Positions 2,525 to 39,900 of a stretch of 64,000 nt of DNA are shown one piece after another. Location: positions 12,028,001 to 12,092,000 of the forward strand of contig NC_047077.1 in NCBI RefSeq assembly GCF_902459465.1, given 5' to 3'. Source of the DNA: Asterias rubens. Its lineage: Eukaryota. Every line of letters starts with the position of its first letter. Position 1 is the first letter of the stretch. A program made the position numbers and the translations under genes. A model generated the notes under the pieces. It saw only the letters and a list, made by a program, of their open reading frames with translations, was not told the origin of the DNA and searched no databases.

Positions 2525-2680
2525 GTTGACATCTCAGGTGTTTTAATGTTTTAATATTGACTAGCTTGGTGATGGTGCTGATGATCATGCAGGGAGCCGT
2601 CCCAAGTTCCGCTGAACGTCTCTGCACCTGCAAGGGGGGGGGGTTGGAGACACGTCGACGGGTTACTGAAGCACGCATCA
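2114..2680 (+). pseudogene. Truncated, frameshifted tectonin-lectin paralogue (exons 2114-2133 and 2565-~2680)
   Basis: ATG AAG TTT CAA CGC TTC AT|gt ... tag|C TTG GTG ATG gives the signal peptide MKFQRFILVMVLMIMQGAVPSSA, with the same phase-2 junction as the five intact genes. It continues ERLCTCK, a G10 run, then in a shifted frame WRHVDGLLKHAS (start of blade 1). Homology ends there. The donor gtgctt is weak. Confidence 0.7.
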
Positions 2681-3617
2681 AGGTCTTCAAATTTTCTAAG
2701 AAACACCTGTGCGTGCTTAGGCATCTGTCCGGCATTGGAACGAGGGAACAAAAAGAAACTCAAAATGTAGGCTAAGTTAAAAACCAGCCATATAACGACC
2801 TTGGTTGCATAGATTCTGTTTAAGGAAAAATACACGGTCAAAAGAAAAATTGATGATGTCAACTTAAAAGAAGTTCTAGTCCAACTCAAATGGTCTGGGT
2901 GCTTTTTGTAAGTTTCTCTTAAATATAACTTACTGATGTGCTATTGTTTTTGAGAAATGGGTAAAATAAAGTACGAAAACAGTTTTCGTTCCTAAAACGA
3001 CAATTATTTTAGCATGTAAAACGTATTTTCGTGGCATTGTTTTACTCGAACTTAACTGTTCACTTCACCCATTTTCATTCCATGCTCAGTTTGTGTTTTT
3101 TTTTTCTTAATTTTTTTTCTCTGCAATTTTTGTATTCCTTGCAATGCGCAGTAGAGTATATATAATAGGTCACTTCGCAATGTACATGTCCGTATTATAT
3201 TATATTTTAAGGTTAGATTTCTACTACCATTATCTTCAAATGGTGTAAGCTTAATGAACATCTTTGGACATTGCTTTTTATGTTACAAAAAGTACCCGGG
3301 ACGATTCAAATGAACCATTCCCCTTCACATGAAACGTTAACTTACCCCCACCCCCCTACCCGGGATGAACTGACTGTTCGTAGAGATACGTCACGACTGG
3401 TTACAATACAATGAAGTTCATGATTGACTCCAAACAACATTAGTCACCTGCAAGTGAAACAACTTCCTTCATCTTTAAGTCACTTCTGAAATCCCACTGT
3501 TTCACTTTCAGGAGACCTATCAATGACTTATTTATTTATTCTGTACCTCAGTACCTTTGAGCAAACCTTGCTTCAGGCGCTTTCTAAACGACGACTAAAA
3601 TTTAAACTCACACGGTT

Positions 3618-5993: not shown

Positions 5994-6090
5994 GGGCTAG
6001 ATAGCTCAGTTGGTAGAGCGCCGGCACGTTAAACCGGAGGTCGTTCGTTCAAATCCCGCTCTAGTCAATTTTCTTTGTTCAATCCAAAAT
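5994..6090 (+). mobile_element. tRNA-derived SINE head
   Basis: A-box tagctcagttgg and degenerate B-box gttcaaatcc, followed by a tail shared with copies at ~11214-11300 and 22148-22226. No intact cloverleaf. Confidence 0.75.
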
Positions 6091-7107: not shown

Positions 7108-7939
7108 TTAATTTGTCCTTTTAACAAAGATATAGTTAGTGTTAGTTGTTCCCCAAATCGTGAGTGACAAGGAGTCCACCTGATTCAAAGCACCCGGGAT
7201 ATTCTGCCAGTCACTCCCCCTCGGGTTAGCAGCGGACACGCCCACTCTAAAATAAATCATATTCCGGTCATTGACCCCGTAGATTCTATCCGCTGAGGTG
7301 ATGTACTTCAGACCACCGTCCACTATGACCCAGTTCAACCCATCGGGATCGGAGTCTGGGTCCCCGTACGTCCCTTCCCTGTAGTAGACGGAACTGGCCG
7401 AGCTAACTCCCCAAACACCACCGCTACCTACCGAGATTTGCTTCATCAAGGTACCCCCAATCTGGCTCCAACTGTCTCCAGCCCTGTTGCATTTGGACGC
7501 TCCAATGCGATGGTAAACGACATCGGTTTCAGATATGCCCCACACGTGGCCCTTCTGACTTACGGTGACGTGTTTAAGGGAGCCTGCCACCTTAACCCAC
7601 ATTGCACCCATCGGGTGACTCCGCCCTATACCCCTACGATAGAACACGTCACGCGTGCTACTCACACCCCAAACGATGTTATTCCCCACATCGACTTGTG
7701 TTAGTCCTTGGCCATCAACTAGCATCCAGCTATCCCCTGCGTCGTTCTCGTTACCGTACGTTTTCTCCCTGTAGTGAACCTGGTTGTTTGCGCTTATGGC
7801 CCACACACCTGCCCGACCGACTGATACTAGTTTAAACCTTCCTTCCAGTTTGGAGAATGAAACCCCGGGGGTTAAACCGCCCTCTATCGGTATTGGTTGT
7901 CTAATGACAATGACCACCACGCAAGATGCCAATAAGATC
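7108..7939 (-). CDS. Secreted tectonin beta-propeller lectin 1, main coding exon (spliced protein 283 aa)
   Basis: Six W-x2-(I/V)-x-G-x-L-K-x-(I/V)-S-V-G...V-W-G-(V/I) tectonin blades. Acceptor tttag|G at 7940/7939. Spliced N-terminus MKLWYQWILLASCVVVIVIRQPIPIEG is signal-peptide-like. The joined CDS is 852 nt, a multiple of 3. Confidence 0.93.
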
Positions 7940-8365
7940 CTAAAGTGAAGACACATGGAGGCAAAAAGAAACTATGAAGTATAGCGCTCTACTAAAGGCA
8001 CATGGACACGCTTGGTATTGTCAAAGAAATGTATTCCCACTTGTTGCATCCCAACATAATGCAAAAATTAAAAAGTTGGTCTCAATAATTATTATTGTTT
8101 ATCGAGTTCGCAAGAGAAGAAAATATACCCTCGTTCCACAAGGTAGTGTGTTTTCAGTTGACTATGTAAAAGACTTTCAGCCACGGTATTTTTTTTATTT
8201 GAGTGTAAAAGTACCTCTTTCTCAAAAACAACGTTAGCTCTTCGGAGAGAGCAGTTTCTCAGTGTTCCCAGCTCCAAGTAAGTTCGTATGCTAAAAATTA
8301 GTCTGAGTAGTTACCAATAAGTACACTAGACAAACTTTCTCTAAACAGTGTGTGTTTCATTCTAT

Positions 8366-15265: not shown

Positions 15266-16055
15266 TTTGGTGTTGCTCCTATGCACTGCGCAGTCCACTT
15301 TGGGGGCGTGGCAGAAAATCGACGGGGGTCTGAAACACGTCTCAGTCGGCCGAGCTGGTGTATGGGGCGTCAACAACAATGACAACATCTACTACCGCAG
15401 AGATACATACGGAGACAATGAAAACCCGGGAACAACCTGGACTCAAATCGCAGGAGGACTGAAACAAGTCGATGTTGGTGACGACATGGTCTGGGGTGTC
15501 AACTCCAATGATGATATCTTCTATCGATCTGACATCAATGAAGGCGATCAAGACGGGGCTGAATGGGTCAAAATTGATGGAAAATTGAAGCATATTAGTG
15601 TCAGCCAAAAGGGGCATGTTTGGGGGGTGAACTCCGGTGATAAGATCTATCACCGTATCGGGGTTAGTGGTTGCAGCAAAGCAGGCTCAAGCTGGAAACT
15701 GATCGCGGGTGGGTTGAAGCAAATTTCAGTTGGTAGCTCGGGTGTTTGGGGAGTCAACTCCGGTGATCAAATCTTCTACCGTCAGGGGACCTTCGGGGAC
15801 CCGGTCGAAGACACCGATGGGTCCGGCTGGACCAATGTGGCTGGCGGTCTCAAGTACATCAGCTCCGCTGAAGTGGTGTATGGTGTCAATGCAGGGGATT
15901 CGATCTACTACCGTGCAGGTGTCTGTGAGGAAACCCCAGTGGGTACATCTTGGGTGCAGATTGCTGGAGGGCTGAAACAGATTGAGTCACTATCACCTGT
16001 TGTCTGGGGCGTCAACTCAAACGCTAATATCTACACAAAAGAAGATGATGCTTAA
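15266..16055 (+). CDS. Secreted tectonin beta-propeller lectin 2, main coding exon (spliced protein 268 aa)
   Basis: Six near-consensus blades (WxQIxGGLKQISVG..GVWGVNSxDxIYYR). Signal peptide MMKFICLVLLLCTAQSTLG. Joined CDS 807 nt. AATAAA at 16120-16125. Confidence 0.95.
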
Positions 16056-22380: not shown

Positions 22381-23496
22381 AATCATTTGAACATTCCAGT
22401 CAGTTTCCCTTGTCGTTTATAATTGATAACTATGGTAAATGTACTGTGAGTTTTTTTTGACATTTTCTGGGTCAACAACTTGCCCAAAATTATTGAGGAC
22501 TTTCCAATATTTCATGGTGACGATTCTTTGGAAAACTTAACGATTTTGAACTGCAAAATTTGTGGAGTAATAAATTCCCCAACTAACAAAAACAAGTTTT
22601 AAATCATTTCTTGACGCAGGGTAAACGATATTGTTGTTGTTACGTCGTTAAAAAAGTGTGTGCAATTATTGCTCGTGTGGCCTAAAAACACCTTATGTTT
22701 TACATACATTTGTAACAGATGGAACTTTAAGGTCAAACACAAAAGCAAAATCTAAGTTCTCTTGACCTAATAATATTTGCATCTGTTATTGAATATGTTG
22801 ATTGAATCTCAATTGATTATCGACCGCTCAGCTTAAGGTTGGCTTAACATAGTTAAATGTGACCCAGAAAAGAAAACTTTTATAAAAACATCTGCTTGTT
22901 ATAAAGAGGGTAACGGTTGTATAAGCATCCTTCAAGCTTGATTCGTATGAGGTTGCTGCGTTGATAAGAAATCAATACAAGTACGTCAAGAAATTTATGA
23001 AAAATAGAACAAACTGAACAAACTTCAAATACCGCATTTGACCTAGCCCACCTGACATCAAGAAACAGTTGCTGGCGTGTTTTTGTGGCGTCAAGGTCCG
23101 CATGTGTTACCCATAGATTATAAATATATATCTATTGTTCATTTAAAAACAGAAATATTAAAATATTTCAGGCATCTGAGAGCACATAAATTTGTGCATT
23201 AAGGGTCTGTGTGCCAACATTCTCTTGCATAATGTTGGGATTCACCAAGTGAGTACTGGTCTTTGACAATATTAGCAAAGGTGTCCAGTTCCTTTAAATC
23301 GAAGTGCACTGATGACTCCTGTAGTGGCAGCCTATTGGCGTAAAGTGGTTGCATGTACATAGGTTAAGGGATTAATGGTCAACAGATTTGAAACAGAGGA
23401 ATGATTAATGATGTGTCACTAACATTCTCTCCGCAGATACAAGCAGTGAGTCGTGTTTCTGACAGTTTCCCCAGGGTAACCTCAGCTGTCTCAAGA

Positions 23497-23513
23497 ATGA
23501 TGACATTGACGTG
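23497..23513 (+). CDS. Lectin 3 start-codon micro-exon (MMTLT+TG)
   Basis: ctaac..ctctccgcag| exon 23437-23513 ending ATG ATG ACA TTG ACG TG|gtatga; phase 2 joins ttaaag|G at 24528. Confidence 0.8.
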
Positions 23514-24527
23514 GTATGATGCATCTCTTGGCTTTCTCAACTTGTTGTCTCTTCTTTCGGGGGTATCATAGCCGAGTGTCACAGCTACTCGAGCGGAATG
23601 TTTTTAACGGGATTCCATTTTAACTTGTTTATAAGGCGTTTGTTTACAATTTAAATGTAATTTTGTTATGTGTACACTTCTGATTTTGTGTAAGTGTCGA
23701 CAAAAAAAAATAGGATTCAACCTCTAGGTTATACAAAACTAAAAACACTTTTGCCGGGGACGACACGCGTCAAAATGACAATGCTTCGACGTCATACTTG
23801 GGAGTTTGCTATGTATACCTCCATGCTGTAAACAAAGCAGCTATACAAACCGGAGCTTCTAACTTTAATGTAACATGAACAATTACGTAACAGAGCTGGA
23901 TAAGAGTATTCGAAATGATTGTCTATTTATAGGCATAGACTCGATTTCCTTATTGATTAAAAGCATTTTTGATGAAATTCGACAAAGTTGTTCAAACTTG
24001 AACTTTTTCGTTCAAGTAGGTCTCTTAAAGCATCGAGTTCAGTTTCTGGTGGCGAAGTCATCAGGATTCGGGGTCTGGGTTCGAATCCTGGTCATGATAC
24101 TTGTGTGTTTGAGCATTACACTATTTCTTTATATATCTTTTGGAGATACACACAAACAAACAGTGGATTATCTATAGACGATGTGACCTATGTTTACATT
24201 CAAACCGCCCTCTGGTGAAAAAACACTATATACGTCATGTTTCGCCGGGCAAAGAGTTGCGTAGTCATAGTAAGATTGCGTACACTTTCTAGCTGGCTGC
24301 CAAAACACAAAGGTTTTGCCCGGCGGTATGCGCGCGAATCATGTTATGGTTTTTTGTGTGACGTCAGAGGTCACATCGTCTATAATGAGGACAATGATCG
24401 ACAATTATGGCTTGTGACCTAAGAAAATTGGTCCCTCCATGTCGCAACTCTCTCCATACACAGCTCTGAATATTTTGAATGTTGCTAACGTTTTTGGTAT
24501 GTCTTTGTTTGATACGATTTTTTAAAG

Positions 24528-25386
24528 GTTTGTTGGGATCGTCTGTATCCTGATAGGTGGTATGCAAAGCACCGGAGAAGCTAACTCCCTAGTACACAAT
24601 CGGGTCAGAAGACACGGGCATCATCACTTTCATAACAAGGACCCGTGGAGTGGCCTCGAAGGGTCCTTGAAGCACGTATCGGTCGGTCTGGCAGGAGTGT
24701 GGGGTGTCAACTGTAAGGACCAAATCTACTATAGAGAAGACACGTACGAAGACGAGGTGTTAGGCAGTGATTGGGTTGAGATTGAAGGGAAACTTGTTCA
24801 AGTCGATGTTGGGGATGATGTTGTATGGGGTGTGAACAGTTGTCAAAACATTTACTATCGGGAGGGTATCTTGGGACGGAACCCCACGGGTAATGATTGG
24901 ATCCTCGTAGAGGGAAAATTGAAACACGTCAGCGTCAGTCAACGTGGGCATGTTTGGGGCGTTAACAAACACGATGATATCTACCATCGAATTGGGGCCA
25001 GCTTTTGGAATCCTGGCGGGGACAGCTGGAACAAAATTTGCGGTAAATTGAAGCAAATCTCAGTTGGTGAGGCGGGGGTGTGGGGCGTTAACTCAGCCCA
25101 TAACATATACTATAGGGATGGGACTTTTGGAGATCCAGAGTCGGACCCAAACGGTACTGGCTGGACACAAGTAGGCGGTCAGCTGAATTACATTAGCTCA
25201 GCTGAGAATGTGTACGGAGTGAACTGTAACGGTTGTGTGTTCAAACGTGTAGGCCGGTGTTCTACCAACCCAGTTGGTACAACATGGGAATCTCACCAGG
25301 GATCCCTGAAACAGATTGAATCCTTTTCATTAATGGTGTGGGGAACCAACAAGCATAACAATGTTTACGAGAAGGATCAAGAATGA
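24528..25386 (+). CDS. Secreted tectonin beta-propeller lectin 3, main coding exon (spliced protein 291 aa)
   Basis: Six tectonin blades. The open frame upstream of the ORF-track ATG encodes FVGIVCILIGG, the signal h-region, after branch site gctaac and acceptor aag|G. Joined CDS 876 nt. AATAAA at 25729-25734. Confidence 0.93.
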
Positions 25387-25398
25387 GGAGGGAGGACA

Positions 25399-25538
25399 AT
25401 GGGCTACTTTGGAACGCTAGGTGGCAGCAGATTTACCGGATAACTTTCCATTGTTTACGTACTTCTGCGTGTGCGCACGTTACTGAAAAAAAAATTACAT
25501 GGTAAGTCTGCTGCCACCTAGTGTCCTAAAGGTCTCCA
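25399..25538. mobile_element. Short MITE with CTCF-like motifs in its TIRs, just 3' of the lectin 3 stop
   Basis: cgctaggtggcagcagatttacc ... ggtaagtctgctgccacctagtg. Related copy at 38008-38142. Confidence 0.7.
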
Positions 25539-27550
25539 GTTTCCACTAAATCACTAGTTATTATTAGTTTATTAATATGTTTAACATTGGGTCGAGTTGA
25601 CTCGGGTCATGGGGTAATATTCTGCGGTATACAAAGGGTATATTTTATTAGTAGCTTCTGAATATACTTTTTTTGTTGTTGTAATGTGTGCAGTTGATTT
25701 CCGATGATTAAATTAAAATCGACAGGGTAATAAAATAGCACCAACAATATAAATTTTAAGAACCCGGATCTCAGACAATTCGTTAACTGTCACTAAACTT
25801 ACGCGTGTGTTGTAAGTCCAATCATACATTTACAAAACAAAAACACGCGTACATGAGCGCCGTGTGCCGTGCACACAACATTCGAGGTCCGATCAGGGCC
25901 CAATTTCATAAAGCTGTTTACCGGTAAGCACATTTTTCTAGCAGAAAAAATGCACGCAAGCATAAACATATTTCCACCATGAATTATCGAGTAAGTAGAA
26001 CTTTTTGAGGCGGGCATGCATGTCCAACCTGGATTTGCATTGCTACGTCACTTATGCTCACGAAACGGCTGCTTACATGTTTTATGACATTGTGCCCTGT
26101 ACGTCTTCTTCTTTGTTTTTTTAGTGGGTCTTGCTTAGATTTGTCAGTGTCACTGTTTCCATTGTAACATCAGTAATATATATTTTGTTTTCAATTGTTC
26201 GGTGTGTCACACAAACTTTTGAAGGTATAAACTTTGTCGTTTGAAGTGCTGGTATCTGTTAAAGTTGAATCTTGCACAATGTTATCTTGAAATTTCGGTA
26301 AAATAAATAGTAGTTATAATAAATTTGAATTGTACTTGTGTCACATTCTGTTTTTTTTTCACGCCGCTATACGTGCGCACGGCAGAAATAAAAAAATAAA
26401 ACATCAACAAAATTCCACACAAATCTGTTAGCTAATCTTAGATATGGAAAACTTCAGCTTATATAACATTATGGAAATATTGACTGCTATGTGGGGCACA
26501 GTTAAAACTATAGGCACAAGGTGATGTCAAAACCATGATTATGCCCAAAGCGAAGCTGAGGGCATAGCCATGGTTTTGACATCACCGAGGGTCTATAATT
26601 TTAACTGTTCCCCGATTATTAAACAGTCAATATTTCTTTTACATACCGAATAAAGATTATTCTAATCAACAACACTCTGACTATACGGTGACAGGTCGTC
26701 TGCGAATAAAGGTCACGCCGTGACACTGAACGCTAGTCGTACATTATACATATCATAGTTGCGTTTTTTTTTTCAGAGCGGGCATAGTCACTGTGACGTC
26801 ATCTTGATAGAAAAAAGGGGGCATAGCTATTTCCATGACTCCATTTTTAACCAATCAGATTAGATAATTATATACATGATGTATATAACAATGATTATAA
26901 CACCCTTATAAATATTCTGCGATGAGATCGGTTTCAGAGCGCGTCACTATGTTTTAGCTTTACTAGGAAGGTGCACTAGCCTCGAAGAACTATACCATGG
27001 CAACCAGGGCAATATAACATTAGCAACCAGTGTACTATACTGAGCTGCGCGGTACCAAGACGTCAATTTAAGTCTATAGCGTACACCGCGAACTACACAT
27101 CTCGAATCCAATCAGTTTTGCATCAGTGCTGTGTGTATCAATAGCGCAGACGAGCGTGTGCTAGGATAGTCTGTCACCCTTTTCAGATAACATGACCGAG
27201 TGCATTGTTCTTTTAATTTGTGCATTTGCTTCAGCTGAACACACCGTTGTATATTTCCATAACAATTTCCGGAACCCCCAGTTCGGGCTATGTATGGGGG
27301 TGTTATAAAAAAATATAATTTATTGGCCGCCTTTTACTCGTGCTACGGTTAAAATACGACTTCCTCGGTGATCCCCGGAGCGGAAAACAGAACGCTCAGA
27401 GCATCTCCTCGAGTGTTATAGTTAACATTCGAAGCAGTCAATATTTGTATGCTATGACTCATCCATGCCATCGCACTTTGCACGACAAAAAAATAAATAT
27501 CTATGACTCGGTGTTCCTTCCAAGATTTGTAATCAGGACGAGTCGACTTC

Positions 27551-29218: not shown

Positions 29219-30050
29219 TTAGTCTGAATCGGTAACGTAGATGTTATCGCCTGAGTTGACGCCCCAAACAACCGAGGACAGGGACTCAATTTGCTTCAAT
29301 CTGCCGGGAAGGGACCGCCATTGGCTGCCGGTTGGGTTGGAAGCAGATATACCCTCACGAGTGTAGATAACATCAGCAGCATTGACTCCGAAGATCCCTG
29401 TCGCTGAACTGACGTATTTCAAAGCACCAGGGACTCGTTCCCAGGTTGAACCGTTAGGATCTGACGCAGGATCACCGAAGGTTCCCACACGGTAGTAAAT
29501 GCTATCACCGGAGTTGACGCCCCATACTCCCGCATCACCCACCGAGATCTGCTTCAACTTGCCTGATATTTGTTTCCAGCTTCCCTCAGGATAGCAAATA
29601 GATCCCGCGATGCGGTGGTATATATTGTCATTTGAATTGACGCCCCAGACGTGACCATTCTGGCTGACGCTGACGTGTTTCAGAGCTCCAGCCACCTGAA
29701 CCCAAGATGTACCAGTGGGGGATGCATTCGAGATGCCAGCACGATAGTAGATGTTGTCGTTGGAGTTGACGCCCCATGCAACATCCTGACCAACATCGAT
29801 CTGCTTAAGTCTCCCACCTATACTAACCCAAGTAGACCCCCGATTAGCCTCGTCGCCATATGTGCTCACTCTATAGTAGATGACGTCACCACTGTTGACA
29901 CCCCACACGCCGGCTTGACCAATTGAAACATGTTTCAAAGCCCCACCGATCTGTTGCCACGAGATTTGTGTTTCGCTGTCCCTCTTATGCACTTCTTGGT
30001 TGGAAACATGGCTACGTACACCCGTTATTATGCACAGGAGTAGCGTCAAG
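29219..30050 (-). CDS. Secreted tectonin beta-propeller lectin 4, main coding exon (spliced protein 283 aa)
   Basis: Six consensus blades. Acceptor tatgtttag|C at 30050. Signal MAVAIYCLTLLLCIITGVRS. Joined CDS 852 nt. AATAAA (minus strand) at 29135-29140. Confidence 0.95.
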
Positions 30051-30846
30051 CTAAACATAGAGATACGACAGAAAAAAGTTATTTTGTGTAGCGCCCTCTC
30101 TCGGTTTAGTTCTATAGGTTTGTTACAAAGTGGCCGATGTTGAAAATTGTTTGAATATTTGCATTGTGTAGATAAATAGGAAGAAACTATTTTAATTGCA
30201 AAAACTGACTGAAAATGGGGGTGAATACACGTCTACTCCCCCGAGGGACTTTGAATGACATGAACCAGAAATAGGTCCCCCTTACAGGCCCAACAAGGGG
30301 GGGGGGGGGTTAGACGTGCACTAATTACCGAATTATGCCAGTCCGTATGTGTTTTATATTACTCTCACTCTTAAAAGTGAAAAAGAAAACAAGCTGGAAA
30401 AGGAAGGAAGTGTTTTAGTTACTGTTCACGGATAACGTCAAGAGATGGCACTGTAAACCAGTCACGCGATCACATGACTGTATGAGGGAGGTTTAGCTGC
30501 ACGTTAGCGAGCAAAATACTTGAACGTGAACGTCAGAAAATTCTGAAACGTGAAGTATAGCATTTCTCACGTCAGGTACGTACGTGCAGACTTCATACGC
30601 AAGCATAAAATAGGCCCAATGTGGTGACGTCACATAGAAACGACAATGACATACACGATCTCGTTTTTGCTTGCGTATCGTGCAGTTTAAAACCTCCATA
30701 TTAGTTCACCCGACGTGACCGTGTTTCAGCCAACCAGAAAACAAAACAAACAAGAGCGTGTTGTAATATTTTTTTCTGGCTGCTGTTGAGTTCAGTCAAA
30801 CTTGGTATGAAGTTTCGTTTTTTTGGGGTGTGTTTCCAGGACTGGC

Positions 30847-38632: not shown

Positions 38633-39533
38633 CTAATCCGTCTCCTTCACATAAATGTTACCGTTAGTATTGACACCCCAGACGGCAAGTGACAGTGACT
38701 CGATCTGTGACAGTCCCCCTGGAATATTCTGCCAGCCAGTACCCTTCGGTGCCGCAGCAGACACCCCCAGCCTATAATAAATATTGTTGTTAGAATTCAC
38801 CCCATAGATATCGTCGCCTGAGCTGATGTACTTCAAAGCTCCGGATACACGGGTCCAGGTGGAACCGTCAGGATCCGAATCCGGATCGCCGAAAGTCCCC
38901 TCCCTGTAGTAGATGTTATCTGCGGAGTTAACGCCCCATACTCCCCCGCTACCCACCGAAATCTGCTTCAATCCGCCCCCGATCTGACGCCAGTCATTGC
39001 CCAGAACATTACAGTTGCTGGCCCCAAGACGATGGTAAATATTATCGCCTGAGTTTACACCCCAAACATGCCCCTTCTGGCTAACGCTGACGTGCTTCAA
39101 AGCACCACCGACTTGACTCCATCCGGTACCGGTTGGGTTACCAGACGTTATGCCCTGTCGAGCATAGATATTATCGTTACTGTTCACACCCCAGACTACG
39201 TTTTTACCAACATCGAGTTGTGACAGTCCTCCACTGACTTGTATCCAAGAGGCGCCTGTGTTTTGTTCGTTGCCATACGACCCTTCCCTGAAGTAGATAT
39301 TACCGTTTGAGTTAGCTCCCCAAACACCAGACGAGCCGATGGATACGTGGATGAGACCCCCTGGGATGTTCTGCCAACCTAGTCTGGCACACGGACAGAG
39401 TTGCACCGCCTCGTAAGACTTCTCTTCATCTATAACTGTCTCTGCCATGTCGGTGGGGCTTGGGTTTCTTGGTTCGAACCATTTGTCGGGCTGGCTGAAC
39501 ACAATTGGCGTGATCAGCAGCATCAAAACCAAA
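38633..39533 (-). CDS. Secreted tectonin beta-propeller lectin 5, main coding exon (spliced protein 306 aa)
   Basis: Six consensus blades. Acceptor ctaac..ttttttcattcag|T at 39533. Signal MAYKAICLVLMLLITPIVFS. Joined CDS 921 nt. Confidence 0.95.
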
Positions 39534-39669: not shown

Positions 39670-39900
39670 TGTATACTCAGTACTTATTGAGCTCTGTGAA
39701 AAAAATCACGGGATTCGAACACACGACCTTTGAAAGTCGAACTGCCTCTAGCTACCGGGCATTCTCGGTGGACTAGACGGGAATACACTGGTCTAATCAC
39801 GGGTCGTGGGTTCGAATCCCACCCGACTATACTTATACGCACGTCATTATTTTCCCGACAGAGATCGGGCAAGTACTGAAGTATACAGTGCTAAACACAA
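39670..39900. mobile_element. Head-to-head tRNA-derived SINE pair in the lectin 5 intron
   Basis: ggattcgaac at ~39711 (minus B-box) and ggttcgaatccc at ~39809 (plus B-box), with mirrored aagtactga(a)gtatac tails. Confidence 0.6.

What the first reader, a model, noticed from the sequence alone, without database searches (positions are those of the whole stretch)
24601..24633. Lectin 3: a furin site would expose an N-terminal His cluster with an ATCUN motif
Seen: after the signal peptide comes NSLVHN-RVRR-HGHHHFHNKD, then blade 1. Established: R-X-R-R is a furin consensus, and a free N-terminal Xaa-Zaa-His (here H-G-H) is the ATCUN Cu(II)/Ni(II) site, present in several antimicrobial peptides where it can promote ROS damage. 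Inference: a protease-activated lectin that couples glycan recognition to metal binding or delivery. I know of no tectonin described with this module.
Basis: partly seen in the sequence, partly recalled or inferred. Interest (0 to 1): 0.78.

Follow-up and report, generated by a model that had tools for sequence, protein, structure and literature searches.

The report
Starfish lectin with furin-site, histidine-rich tail
A secreted sugar-binding propeller protein of the common starfish carries a short floppy N-terminal extension, so far seen only in the genus Asterias, made of a textbook furin cleavage site followed by a histidine cluster; clipping there would leave a copper/nickel-binding end, as in hepcidin and albumin, but neither cleavage nor metal binding has been shown.

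Summary
Window 24601-24633 (+) encodes R-V-R-R-H-G-H-H-H-F-H. The window is Asterias rubens, and the gene is the third of five tandem tectonin / fish-egg-lectin genes. Its spliced product is identical to RefSeq XP_033640711.1 ('lectin L6-like', 291 aa).

- **Signal peptide:** it is split by a phase-2 intron (ATG at 23497, donor at 23514, acceptor at 24527). All four paralogues checked have an acceptor at the same place and phase. An RNA contig stops fitting the genome exactly at this acceptor.
- **Extension:** residues 25-44 lie outside the six-bladed propeller and are predicted to be disordered, so the RVRR site should be accessible.
- **Metal site:** cleavage after R34 would give an H-G-H amino terminus that meets the formal ATCUN rule. 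Almost any cut inside this His cluster would do the same, so 'His-rich metal-binding tail' is the safer reading.
- **Conservation:** the A. amurensis orthologue has the identical segment, but the species are too close (dS 0.04) for that to mean anything. No deeper orthologue was found, and no other tectonin among about 250 examined has the module.
- **Paralogue:** neighbouring Lectin 4 has a basic pair (VHKR) at the aligned place, which hints at an older short propeptide.
- **Precedent:** furin unmasking an ATCUN end is already known from hepcidin and albumin.

Verdict: a real, lineage-specific variant. Its function is untested and the interest is modest.

The parts
23437..23513 (+). Exon carrying the start codon. 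ATG is at 23497, and 23497-23513 codes M-M-T-L-T plus the first two bases of W6. The 5' boundary is approximate, and at least one further 5'-UTR exon lies upstream.
   Evidence: A pattern search with the A. amurensis N-terminus hit this place, and the sequence shows it. AG lies at 23435-36 and GT at 23514-15. The X1 RNA-contig depth in the two bins equals a piece of about 78 nt at the same depth (63) as the main exon. The spliced product is identical to XP_033640711.1.
23514..24527 (+). Phase-2 intron inside the signal peptide (GT..AG, 1014 nt). It holds a high-copy dispersed repeat at about 24087-24450.
   Evidence: The X1 contig (1117 nt) fits 24527-25434, and its remaining 209 nt do not fit upstream of the acceptor. 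The X2 genomic contig runs straight across the acceptor. Lectins 1, 2, 4 and 5 have an acceptor at the same position and phase.
24528..24582 (+). Remainder of the signal peptide (W6 third base, F7..A24). The hydrophobic core is FVGIVCILIGG, and the likely signal-peptidase cut is after G22 or A24.
   Evidence: A Kyte-Doolittle 9-mer peak of 3.4 and (-3,-1) rule candidates. SignalP was not available.
24583..24612 (+). Putative 10-residue propeptide NSLVHNRVRR, ending in the furin-type site R31-V-R-R34 (24601-24612).
   Evidence: Direct reading. The segment is disordered in the model. Lectin 4 has SNQEVHKR at the aligned place.
24613..24642 (+). His-rich tail H35-G-H-H-H-F-H-N-K-D44. After a cut at R34 the amino terminus would be H-G-H, which has the ATCUN form Xaa-Zaa-His.
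   Evidence: Direct reading. pLDDT is below 50 through residue 42. No homologue aligns before residue 35, and nearly all alignments begin at residues 41-48.
24643..25386 (+). Six-bladed tectonin / fish-egg-lectin beta-propeller (P45 to E291) plus the stop codon.
   Evidence: Pfam PF19193 4e-60 and PF06462. PDB sequence hits are Tectonin 2 5fsb at 1e-28, aligned from P45-W46, and carp fish-egg lectin 4ruq at 1e-22. The AF2 model has mean pLDDT 89.5. Foldseek gives 5fsb and 4ruq as top hits with TM about 0.85 normalised on the target.
25394..25544 (.). MITE-like inverted repeat (two 54-nt arms, 74% complementary) just after the stop codon, in the 3' UTR. It is a high-copy element and not part of the module.
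   Evidence: the repeat finder. Read and contig depth is hundreds- to thousands-fold higher at 25374-25607 in all four runs, and the X1 transcript contig breaks at 25434.

Best explanation
Lectin 3 is a secreted six-bladed tectonin / fish-egg-lectin-type propeller of Asterias rubens (RefSeq XP_033640711.1). So far only in the genus Asterias, it carries a disordered 20-residue N-terminal extension.

The most likely sequence of events is this:
1. The split signal peptide is removed around A24.
2. A furin-like convertase in the late secretory pathway cuts after R-V-R-R34 and removes a propeptide of about 10 residues.
3. The mature lectin of about 28.7 kDa starts H-G-H-H-H-F-H-N-K-D, followed by the propeller.

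That flexible tail at the rim of the propeller is chemically able to chelate Cu(II) and Ni(II) in the ATCUN 4N mode, and Zn(II) and Ni(II) through several imidazoles. It would add a metal-dependent property to a glycan-binding pattern-recognition protein, for example cross-linking or oligomerisation, or metal capture at the bound surface.

Shown here: the gene model, splicing, the fold, the disorder of the extension, the presence of the motifs, and their restriction to Asterias in the data available.

Inferred, with my odds:
- Secretion: about 0.9.
- Cleavage at RVRR: about 0.55.
- Metal binding by the tail in vitro: about 0.8 if the tail is exposed.
- A physiological metal-linked role: about 0.25.
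- Cu-ATCUN ROS killing: about 0.1.
For: - **Motif and frame:**
- **Gene model:** the spliced product is identical to the A. rubens RefSeq protein and 96% identical to A. amurensis XP_071804529.1. An RNA contig ends exactly at the acceptor with 209 unaligned 5' letters, and its depth matches a 78-nt ATG exon.
- **Family and fold:** Tectonin Pfam match. PDB relatives start at P45-W46. The AF2 propeller has pLDDT 89.5, with residues 22-42 below 50. Foldseek top hits are Tectonin 2 and carp fishelectin.
- **Intact lectin:** all 38 residues invariant among 17 sea-star and mollusc relatives are kept.
- **Older propeptide:** Lectin 4 has VHKR at the aligned place before its blade 1. This fits a short convertase-processed propeptide that predates the His cluster.
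- **Convertase in the host:** echinoderms have furin and RX[K/R]R activation sites (PMC8467561).
- **Precedent:** furin cleavage of prohepcidin exposes the DTH ATCUN site (PMC9779829).
- **Not chance:** RX[KR]R in the linker has p about 0.002, and the His cluster about 2e-7 per position.
Against: - There is no protein-level evidence for the mature N-terminus. ProP, PiTou and SignalP could not be run.
- Identity of the segment in A. amurensis is uninformative: dS 0.042, dN/dS 0.51, and p about 0.43 for no change in 20 residues.
- No deeper orthologue was found, so purifying selection on the module is unproven.
- CAT CAT CAC could be a slippage-born low-complexity stretch.
- The tree does not resolve Lectin 3 and Lectin 4 as sisters, so the shared basic pair could be convergent.
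- The biological role of the ATCUN site is unclear even in hepcidin (PMC9779829).
- Expression was low or absent in the two raw RNA runs laid, which came from a relative that is a few per cent diverged.
Confidence: 0.45

Rival explanations
1. The extension is a neutral, lineage-specific linker. The His run arose by triplet slippage or drift in a poorly constrained N-terminal linker, and RVRR is an inherited propeptide site, an upgraded one or a chance one. The tail has no selected metal-related function, and the protein works simply as one more tectonin lectin of the cluster.
For: - N-terminal linkers differ completely among the five paralogues.
- dN/dS of 0.51 shows only moderate constraint on the gene.
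- The module is seen only in two species that differ at 4% of residues.
- The extension is disordered.
- The CAT CAT CAC codons are repeat-like.
Against: A consensus convertase site and a 5-of-7 His cluster standing side by side are very unlikely under simple composition. The module is absent from about 250 other family members. Chemically, an exposed multi-His tail will bind transition metals whether or not it was selected to.
Confidence: 0.33
2. The extension is not cleaved. RVRR-HGHHHFHNK acts as a cationic, pH- or metal-tunable patch that helps the lectin stick to anionic targets such as LPS, sulfated glycans or membranes, in the manner of histidine-rich glycoprotein or histatin-type sequences, or it acts as a granule-sorting signal.
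For: The segment holds four Arg/Lys and six His within 14 residues. It is a flexible tail outside the propeller. The family's named relatives (lectin L6 / tachylectin-1) are LPS-binding lectins by my own knowledge, and the hit names are.
Against: An exposed R-x-R-R in a protein that passes through the trans-Golgi is normally cut by furin-type convertases, which echinoderms possess. His is largely uncharged at the pH of sea water or coelomic fluid.
Confidence: 0.17
3. The protein is not secreted. Translation would start at the internal ATG (24562, M18), giving a cytosolic lectin without a leader, so no convertase would ever see the site.
For: The longest single-exon ORF starts at that ATG. An ORF-caller product of 274 aa exists in Logan/ENA assemblies (P0122).
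Against: The frame is open and hydrophobic upstream of M18, back to a good acceptor. The intron position and phase are the same in the four paralogues checked. RefSeq models in two species use the upstream ATG. The RNA contig continues 209 nt beyond the acceptor.
Confidence: 0.03

Closest known systems
Hepcidin-25 (prohepcidin cut by furin at RRRRR|DTHF)
   Same: A signal peptide, then a propeptide ending in a furin site, and a new amino terminus of the form Xaa-Zaa-His that makes an ATCUN Cu(II)/Ni(II) site (PMC9779829).
   Different: Hepcidin is a 25-residue disulfide-rich hormone or antimicrobial peptide with a 35-residue propeptide and a single His in the motif. Here the site sits on a 28.7-kDa lectin, the propeptide is about 10 residues, and the His is part of a 5-of-7 cluster. 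There is no sequence relationship.
Serum albumin (proalbumin RGVFRR|DAHK; from my own knowledge, not checked in a paper here)
   Same: A very short propeptide directly after the signal peptide is removed by furin in the Golgi. This exposes the prototype ATCUN site on a large secreted protein that keeps the site attached.
   Different: Albumin is a helical carrier protein of vertebrates and has no His cluster and no lectin domain.
Carp fish-egg lectin (PDB 4ruq/4rus) and Laccaria bicolor Tectonin 2 (PDB 5fsb/5fsc)
   Same: The same six-bladed tectonin propeller. Sequence E-values are 1e-22 and 1e-28, and the Foldseek TM-score is about 0.85 on the target.
   Different: Tectonin 2, as crystallised, starts at the residues aligned to P45-W46; none of the roughly 250 relatives examined carries a basic site plus His-rich tail at its N-terminus. 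Sugar specificity of the starfish protein is unknown.
Lectin L6 / tachylectin-1 and the 31-kDa tachylectin-like subunit of snail perivitellin-2 (the names NCBI gives the relatives)
   Same: Secreted invertebrate tectonin-type lectins of about 250-300 aa. The paralogues in this cluster carry these names by homology.
   Different: None of the relatives carrying these names has the RVRR or His module. PV2's lectin works disulfide-linked to a MACPF partner, and no such partner is evident in this window.
Asterias rubens Lectin 4 (window 29219-30058, minus strand), the neighbouring paralogue
   Same: The same intron in the signal peptide, and a basic pair (SNQEVHKR) at the aligned position about 7 residues before blade 1.
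   Different: After the basic pair comes DSETQIS, which is acidic or polar with no His, so there would be no ATCUN site. K-R alone is a weaker furin site than R-x-R-R.
Histatin-5-type His-rich antimicrobial peptides (from my own knowledge)
   Same: An ATCUN-type amino terminus combined with further His residues that bind Zn and Cu.
   Different: Histatins are free peptides of about 24 residues. Here there is no second cleavage site between the His cluster and the propeller, so the tail would stay attached to the lectin.

Membership tests
Tectonin / fish-egg-lectin family (Pfam PF19193) | Sequence match to the Tectonin profile above the curated cut-off | tested here: met
   PF19193 at 203 bits against a cut-off of 30, and PF06462 at 68 bits against 21.
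Tectonin / fish-egg-lectin family (Pfam PF19193) | Six-bladed beta-propeller fold like the solved members | tested here: met
   The AF2 model has pLDDT 89.5 and 24 strands. Foldseek top hits are 5fsb and 4ruq at E about 1e-20.
Tectonin / fish-egg-lectin family (Pfam PF19193) | Carbohydrate binding | not testable with these tools
   Only indirect evidence: all 38 columns invariant among 17 relatives are kept.
Furin / proprotein-convertase substrates | R-X-[K/R]-R consensus with P1 Arg | tested here: met
   R31-V-R-R34, with P6 His, P1' His and P2' Gly.
Furin / proprotein-convertase substrates | Entry into the secretory pathway (cleavable signal peptide) | tested here: inconclusive
   A hydrophobic core of 11 residues and (-3,-1) sites after G22 and A24. 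The leader exon structure is shared by all paralogues checked. No SignalP run was possible.
Furin / proprotein-convertase substrates | Site exposed in a flexible region | tested here: met
   Residues 22-42 have pLDDT below 50 and no secondary structure.
Furin / proprotein-convertase substrates | Convertase present in the organism's lineage | tested here: met
   From the literature only: furin is present in a holothurian, and RX[K/R]R activation sites occur in most echinoderm MMPs (PMC8467561). The A. rubens furin gene itself was not looked up.
Furin / proprotein-convertase substrates | Cleavage actually observed | not testable with these tools
   No proteomic paper mentions this protein or Asterias tectonins.
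ATCUN (amino-terminal Cu/Ni) motif | His at position 3, and residue 2 not Pro | tested here: met
   H35-G36-H37, conditional on a cut after R34.
ATCUN (amino-terminal Cu/Ni) motif | Free, unmodified alpha-amine at position 1 | not testable with these tools
   This depends on an exact convertase cut and no further trimming.
ATCUN (amino-terminal Cu/Ni) motif | Cu(II)/Ni(II) binding in the 4N square-planar mode | not testable with these tools
   Needs spectroscopy of the peptide or protein.
Free His-rich antimicrobial peptides (histatin-like) | Release as a small peptide | tested here: not met
   There is no basic pair or other convertase site between H41 and blade 1 (only N-K-D-P). The single RX[KR]R of the protein is at residue 31.

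The most novel reading that the evidence does not exclude
A pattern-recognition lectin carries a convertase-unmasked ATCUN / multi-His copper site. After the propeller docks on microbial glycans, the tail-bound Cu(II) would cycle and generate reactive oxygen at the target surface, or the tail would withhold Zn, Cu or Ni from it. This would be a one-chain fusion of glycan targeting with metal-based killing, newly evolved in Asterias.
Probability: 0.08. Interest if true: 0.7.

Novelty: new variant of a known kind. Interest (0 to 1): 0.36.

Why it matters
If the tail is exposed and binds metal in vivo, this would be the first tectonin-type lectin with a built-in transition-metal site. It would also be an independent invertebrate example of the furin-unmasks-ATCUN arrangement known from hepcidin and albumin. 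That would give a simple system for asking what such sites are for, a question still open even for hepcidin. It also shows how a tandem lectin cluster diversifies by rewriting only the short linker between the leader and the propeller. If the tail is neutral, the gene is just one more annotated starfish lectin.

Tried and rejected
- **Exon 1 next to the main exon:** the ATGs at 24439 and 24479 with the donor at 24497 have the wrong phase for the acceptor at 24527. This model was dropped once the A. amurensis N-terminus located the real exon at 23497.
- **Deeper orthologues:** the word-indexed search of 5.8 billion clusters gave nothing between 96% and 60% identity. A search restricted to residues 18-60 returned only the Asterias cluster. 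The exhaustive search of 1.84 billion representatives gave alignments that almost all start at residues 41-48, none before 35. Coverage of other starfish transcriptomes in these libraries looks thin, so absence is not evidence of loss.
- **Protein-atlas look-alikes of residues 1-48:** scores were at most 0.53, which is uninformative.
- **Literature:** nothing was found for the accession, for Asterias plus tectonin, or for Asterias rubens plus lectin L6. Asterias rubens plus tachylectin returned only two general papers, which I did not open. Solaster 'repellent' also gave nothing. A salmon leukolectin preprint says nothing on propeptides.
- **Raw RNA runs X6 and X7:** they turned out to be from a relative a few per cent diverged, with little or no expression of this gene. 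They gave no junction reads at the motif.
- **Phylogeny:** the tree could not resolve whether Lectins 3 and 4 are sisters.
- **Sixth lectin remnant (2557-2775):** it resembles a different paralogue (P0005-like leader) and lacks the module.
- **Rfam:** no RNA family was found in 22800-26300.
- **Cys-Cys distances:** model coordinates are not exposed, so distances for the unusual cysteines could not be measured.

Full report
**What is in the sequence.** Window 24601-24633 on the + strand reads CGG GTC AGA AGA CAC GGG CAT CAT CAC TTT CAT, which is R-V-R-R-H-G-H-H-H-F-H. It lies in a 274-codon ORF (24562-25386) that matches Pfam Tectonin (PF19193) at 203 bits against a cut-off of 30, and also Hyd_WA. 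Four more ORFs of the same family lie at 7108-7956 (-), 15267-16055 (+), 29219-30058 (-) and 38633-39532 (-). 'Lectin 3' is therefore the third member of a tandem cluster.

**Organism and gene model.** The frame stays open upstream of the first in-exon ATG and reads FVGIVCILIGG-MQSTGEA, directly after a pyrimidine-rich tract and AG at 24526-27. The best database relative is A. amurensis XP_071804529.1, 96% identical, which starts MMILTW-FVGIV.... A degenerate pattern for that start found ATGATGACATTGACGTG|GT at 23497.

Joining 23497-23513 to 24528-25386 gives an 876-nt CDS. Its 291-aa product is identical to Asterias rubens XP_033640711.1, 'lectin L6-like'. The window is therefore A. rubens, and the gene is already annotated.

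Reads support the splice:
- An RNA-type contig of 1117 nt (run X1, 3 mismatches in 908 nt) fits 24527-25434. Its remaining 209 nt do not fit the intron.
- The depth of X1 in the two bins around 23437-23513 equals a piece of about 78 nt at the same depth (63). At least one more 5'-UTR exon must lie further upstream.
- A genomic run (X2) crosses the acceptor without a break.
- Lectins 1, 2, 4 and 5 have an acceptor at the same position and phase inside their leaders, so the split signal peptide is ancestral to the cluster.

**Anatomy of the N-terminus.**
- Residues 1-24 look like a cleavable signal peptide. They have an 11-residue hydrophobic core, too short for a membrane anchor, and (-3,-1) sites after G22 and A24. 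SignalP was not available.
- Residues 25-34 are NSLVHN-RVRR.
- Residues 35-44 are HGHHHFHNKD.
- The propeller begins at P45-W46. That is where Tectonin 2 (5fsb, E 1e-28) starts to align, and where almost all of the 150 best representatives start to align.

An AlphaFold2 model built on 98 relatives has mean pLDDT 89.5. Residues 22-42 are below 50 and have no secondary structure. Its best structural matches are Tectonin 2 and carp fishelectin. The extension is thus a flexible tail outside an intact propeller, and the RVRR site should be accessible. All 38 columns invariant among 17 sea-star and mollusc relatives are kept in Lectin 3, so it is not a decaying copy.

**Is it more than chance, and is it found elsewhere?** With the composition of the five lectins, R-x-[KR]-R in a 20-residue linker has p about 0.002. 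Five or more His in seven has p about 2e-7 per position.
- Among 122 and then 257 family members collected, only the Asterias Lectin-3 cluster has a basic convertase consensus followed by a His cluster at the N-terminus.
- One protein (P0074) has RSRR upstream of blade 1 without any His.
- One protein (P0246) has an R/H-rich linker between a different N-terminal domain and its tectonin repeats.
- A search restricted to residues 18-60 returned only the Asterias cluster.

**Conservation says little.** The segment is identical in A. amurensis, even at the nucleotide level for the 27 bases compared. But the two species differ at only 12 of 291 residues (dS 0.042, dN 0.021, dN/dS 0.51). No change in 20 residues is expected about 43% of the time. 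No orthologue at intermediate distance was found. The libraries seem to hold few other starfish, so this is a gap in the data and not evidence of absence. The Lectin-3 lineage sits on a long stem (0.69) in an unresolved sea-star polytomy. The gene is therefore probably older than the genus, and deeper orthologues should exist to be tested.

**A hint of an older propeptide.** In the alignment, neighbouring Lectin 4 reads ...GVRSHV-SNQEVHKR-DSETQIS-W, against ...GGMQSTGEA-NSLVHNRVRR-HGHHHFHNKDP-W in Lectin 3. A V-H-(x)-basic-basic element at the same place in two paralogues, kept in both Asterias species, fits a short convertase-processed propeptide. In Lectin 3 that propeptide would have been sharpened to R-x-R-R and followed by a new His-rich linker. 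This is an inference, because the tree does not show that the two are sisters.

**Most likely mechanism.** The steps are signal-peptide removal, then a cut after R34 by a furin-like convertase, then a mature 257-residue lectin (about 28.7 kDa, pI about 5.8) with a flexible His-rich amino terminus.

Echinoderms have furin and use RX[K/R]R activation sites widely (PMC8467561). Furin is expected to act on any secreted protein with such a site (PMC8286064). The resulting H-G-H end meets the formal ATCUN definition: a free amine, residue 2 not Pro, and His at position 3. Cuts one or two residues further in would also put His at position 3. The robust statement is therefore 'exposed multi-His tail able to chelate Cu, Ni and Zn', and ATCUN is one of its modes.

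Removing about 10 residues from a floppy tail is unlikely to 'activate' the sugar sites. I therefore read the site as ordinary propeptide trimming that happens to free the amine, not as a switch.

**Comparison with what is known.** The principle is established. [quoted passage not shown] Proalbumin loses RGVFRR to expose DAHK (my own knowledge). What is new is the carrier, a tectonin lectin, and the combination with a His cluster. I found no paper on Asterias tectonins or on this accession.

**Verdict.** The functional inference is plausible but wholly untested, and the available orthologue cannot test it. I class this as a new variant of known kinds (secreted tectonin lectins, and furin-unmasked ATCUN ends), of modest interest at 0.36. 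There is a small chance, about 0.08, that it is a real lectin-targeted metal weapon.

**A slip on my side.** The numbers derived from it (mass and pI) are not critical to the argument.

Noticed in passing
window 24087-24450 (Lectin 3 intron), 23151-23384 and 25842-25958: Stretches with read or contig depth hundreds to thousands of times that of the flanks in all four runs, RNA runs included. They look like high-copy dispersed repeats. Many reads run on into unlike sequence at 24173 and 24384.
   Followed up: partly
window 25394-25544: A MITE-like element directly after the Lectin 3 stop codon, with 54-nt inverted arms (74% complementary) 43 nt apart. It has very high depth, and transcript contigs break inside it.
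   Followed up: partly
Lectin 3 residues 68, 110, 177, 237, 240 and 249 (window about 24712-25257): Lectin 3 has an unusual cysteine pattern. It lacks the Cys of the GASNCN loop and the N-terminal Cys that most paralogues have. It has gained Cys or His in the hairpin turn after the (V)WGVN motif of every blade (CKD, SCQN, KHDD, SAHN, CNGC, KHNN), where the paralogues mostly have S, N, G or D. These could be new disulfides or further metal ligands. Distances could not be measured because model coordinates are not exposed.
   Followed up: no
window 29219-30058 (-), Lectin 4: The ATG that opens the long ORF lies inside the pyrimidine tract or acceptor of the conserved leader intron (ctATGtttag|C). 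The real start is therefore probably in an upstream exon, as in the A. amurensis model. After the leader comes SNQEVHKR|DSETQIS, a possible dibasic propeptide site.
   Followed up: partly
window 2557-2775 (+): A remnant of a sixth lectin. Its leader, LVMVLMIMQGAVPSSAERLCTCK, closely matches the leader of a different A. rubens paralogue (P0005). It then leaves the lectin frame and does not carry the Lectin 3 module.
   Followed up: partly
window 39700-39860 (-), upstream of Lectin 5; and 5995-6067 (+): There are tRNA-like T-arm strings (ggttcgaatccc / gggattcgaaccc) in opposite orientations upstream of Lectin 5. ARAGORN does not call them as tRNAs, so they may be a tRNA-derived SINE. One intact tRNA-Asn(GTT) gene lies at 5995-6067.
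   Followed up: partly
proteins P0011, P0020, P0033-P0036, P0035/P0042, P0041/P0068/P0089 and P0047: Tectonin propellers are often fused to other secreted modules: PAN/Apple, thrombospondin type 1, astacin, phospholipase A2 and CAP. Adding an N-terminal accessory module to this propeller is therefore a recurrent theme.
   Followed up: no
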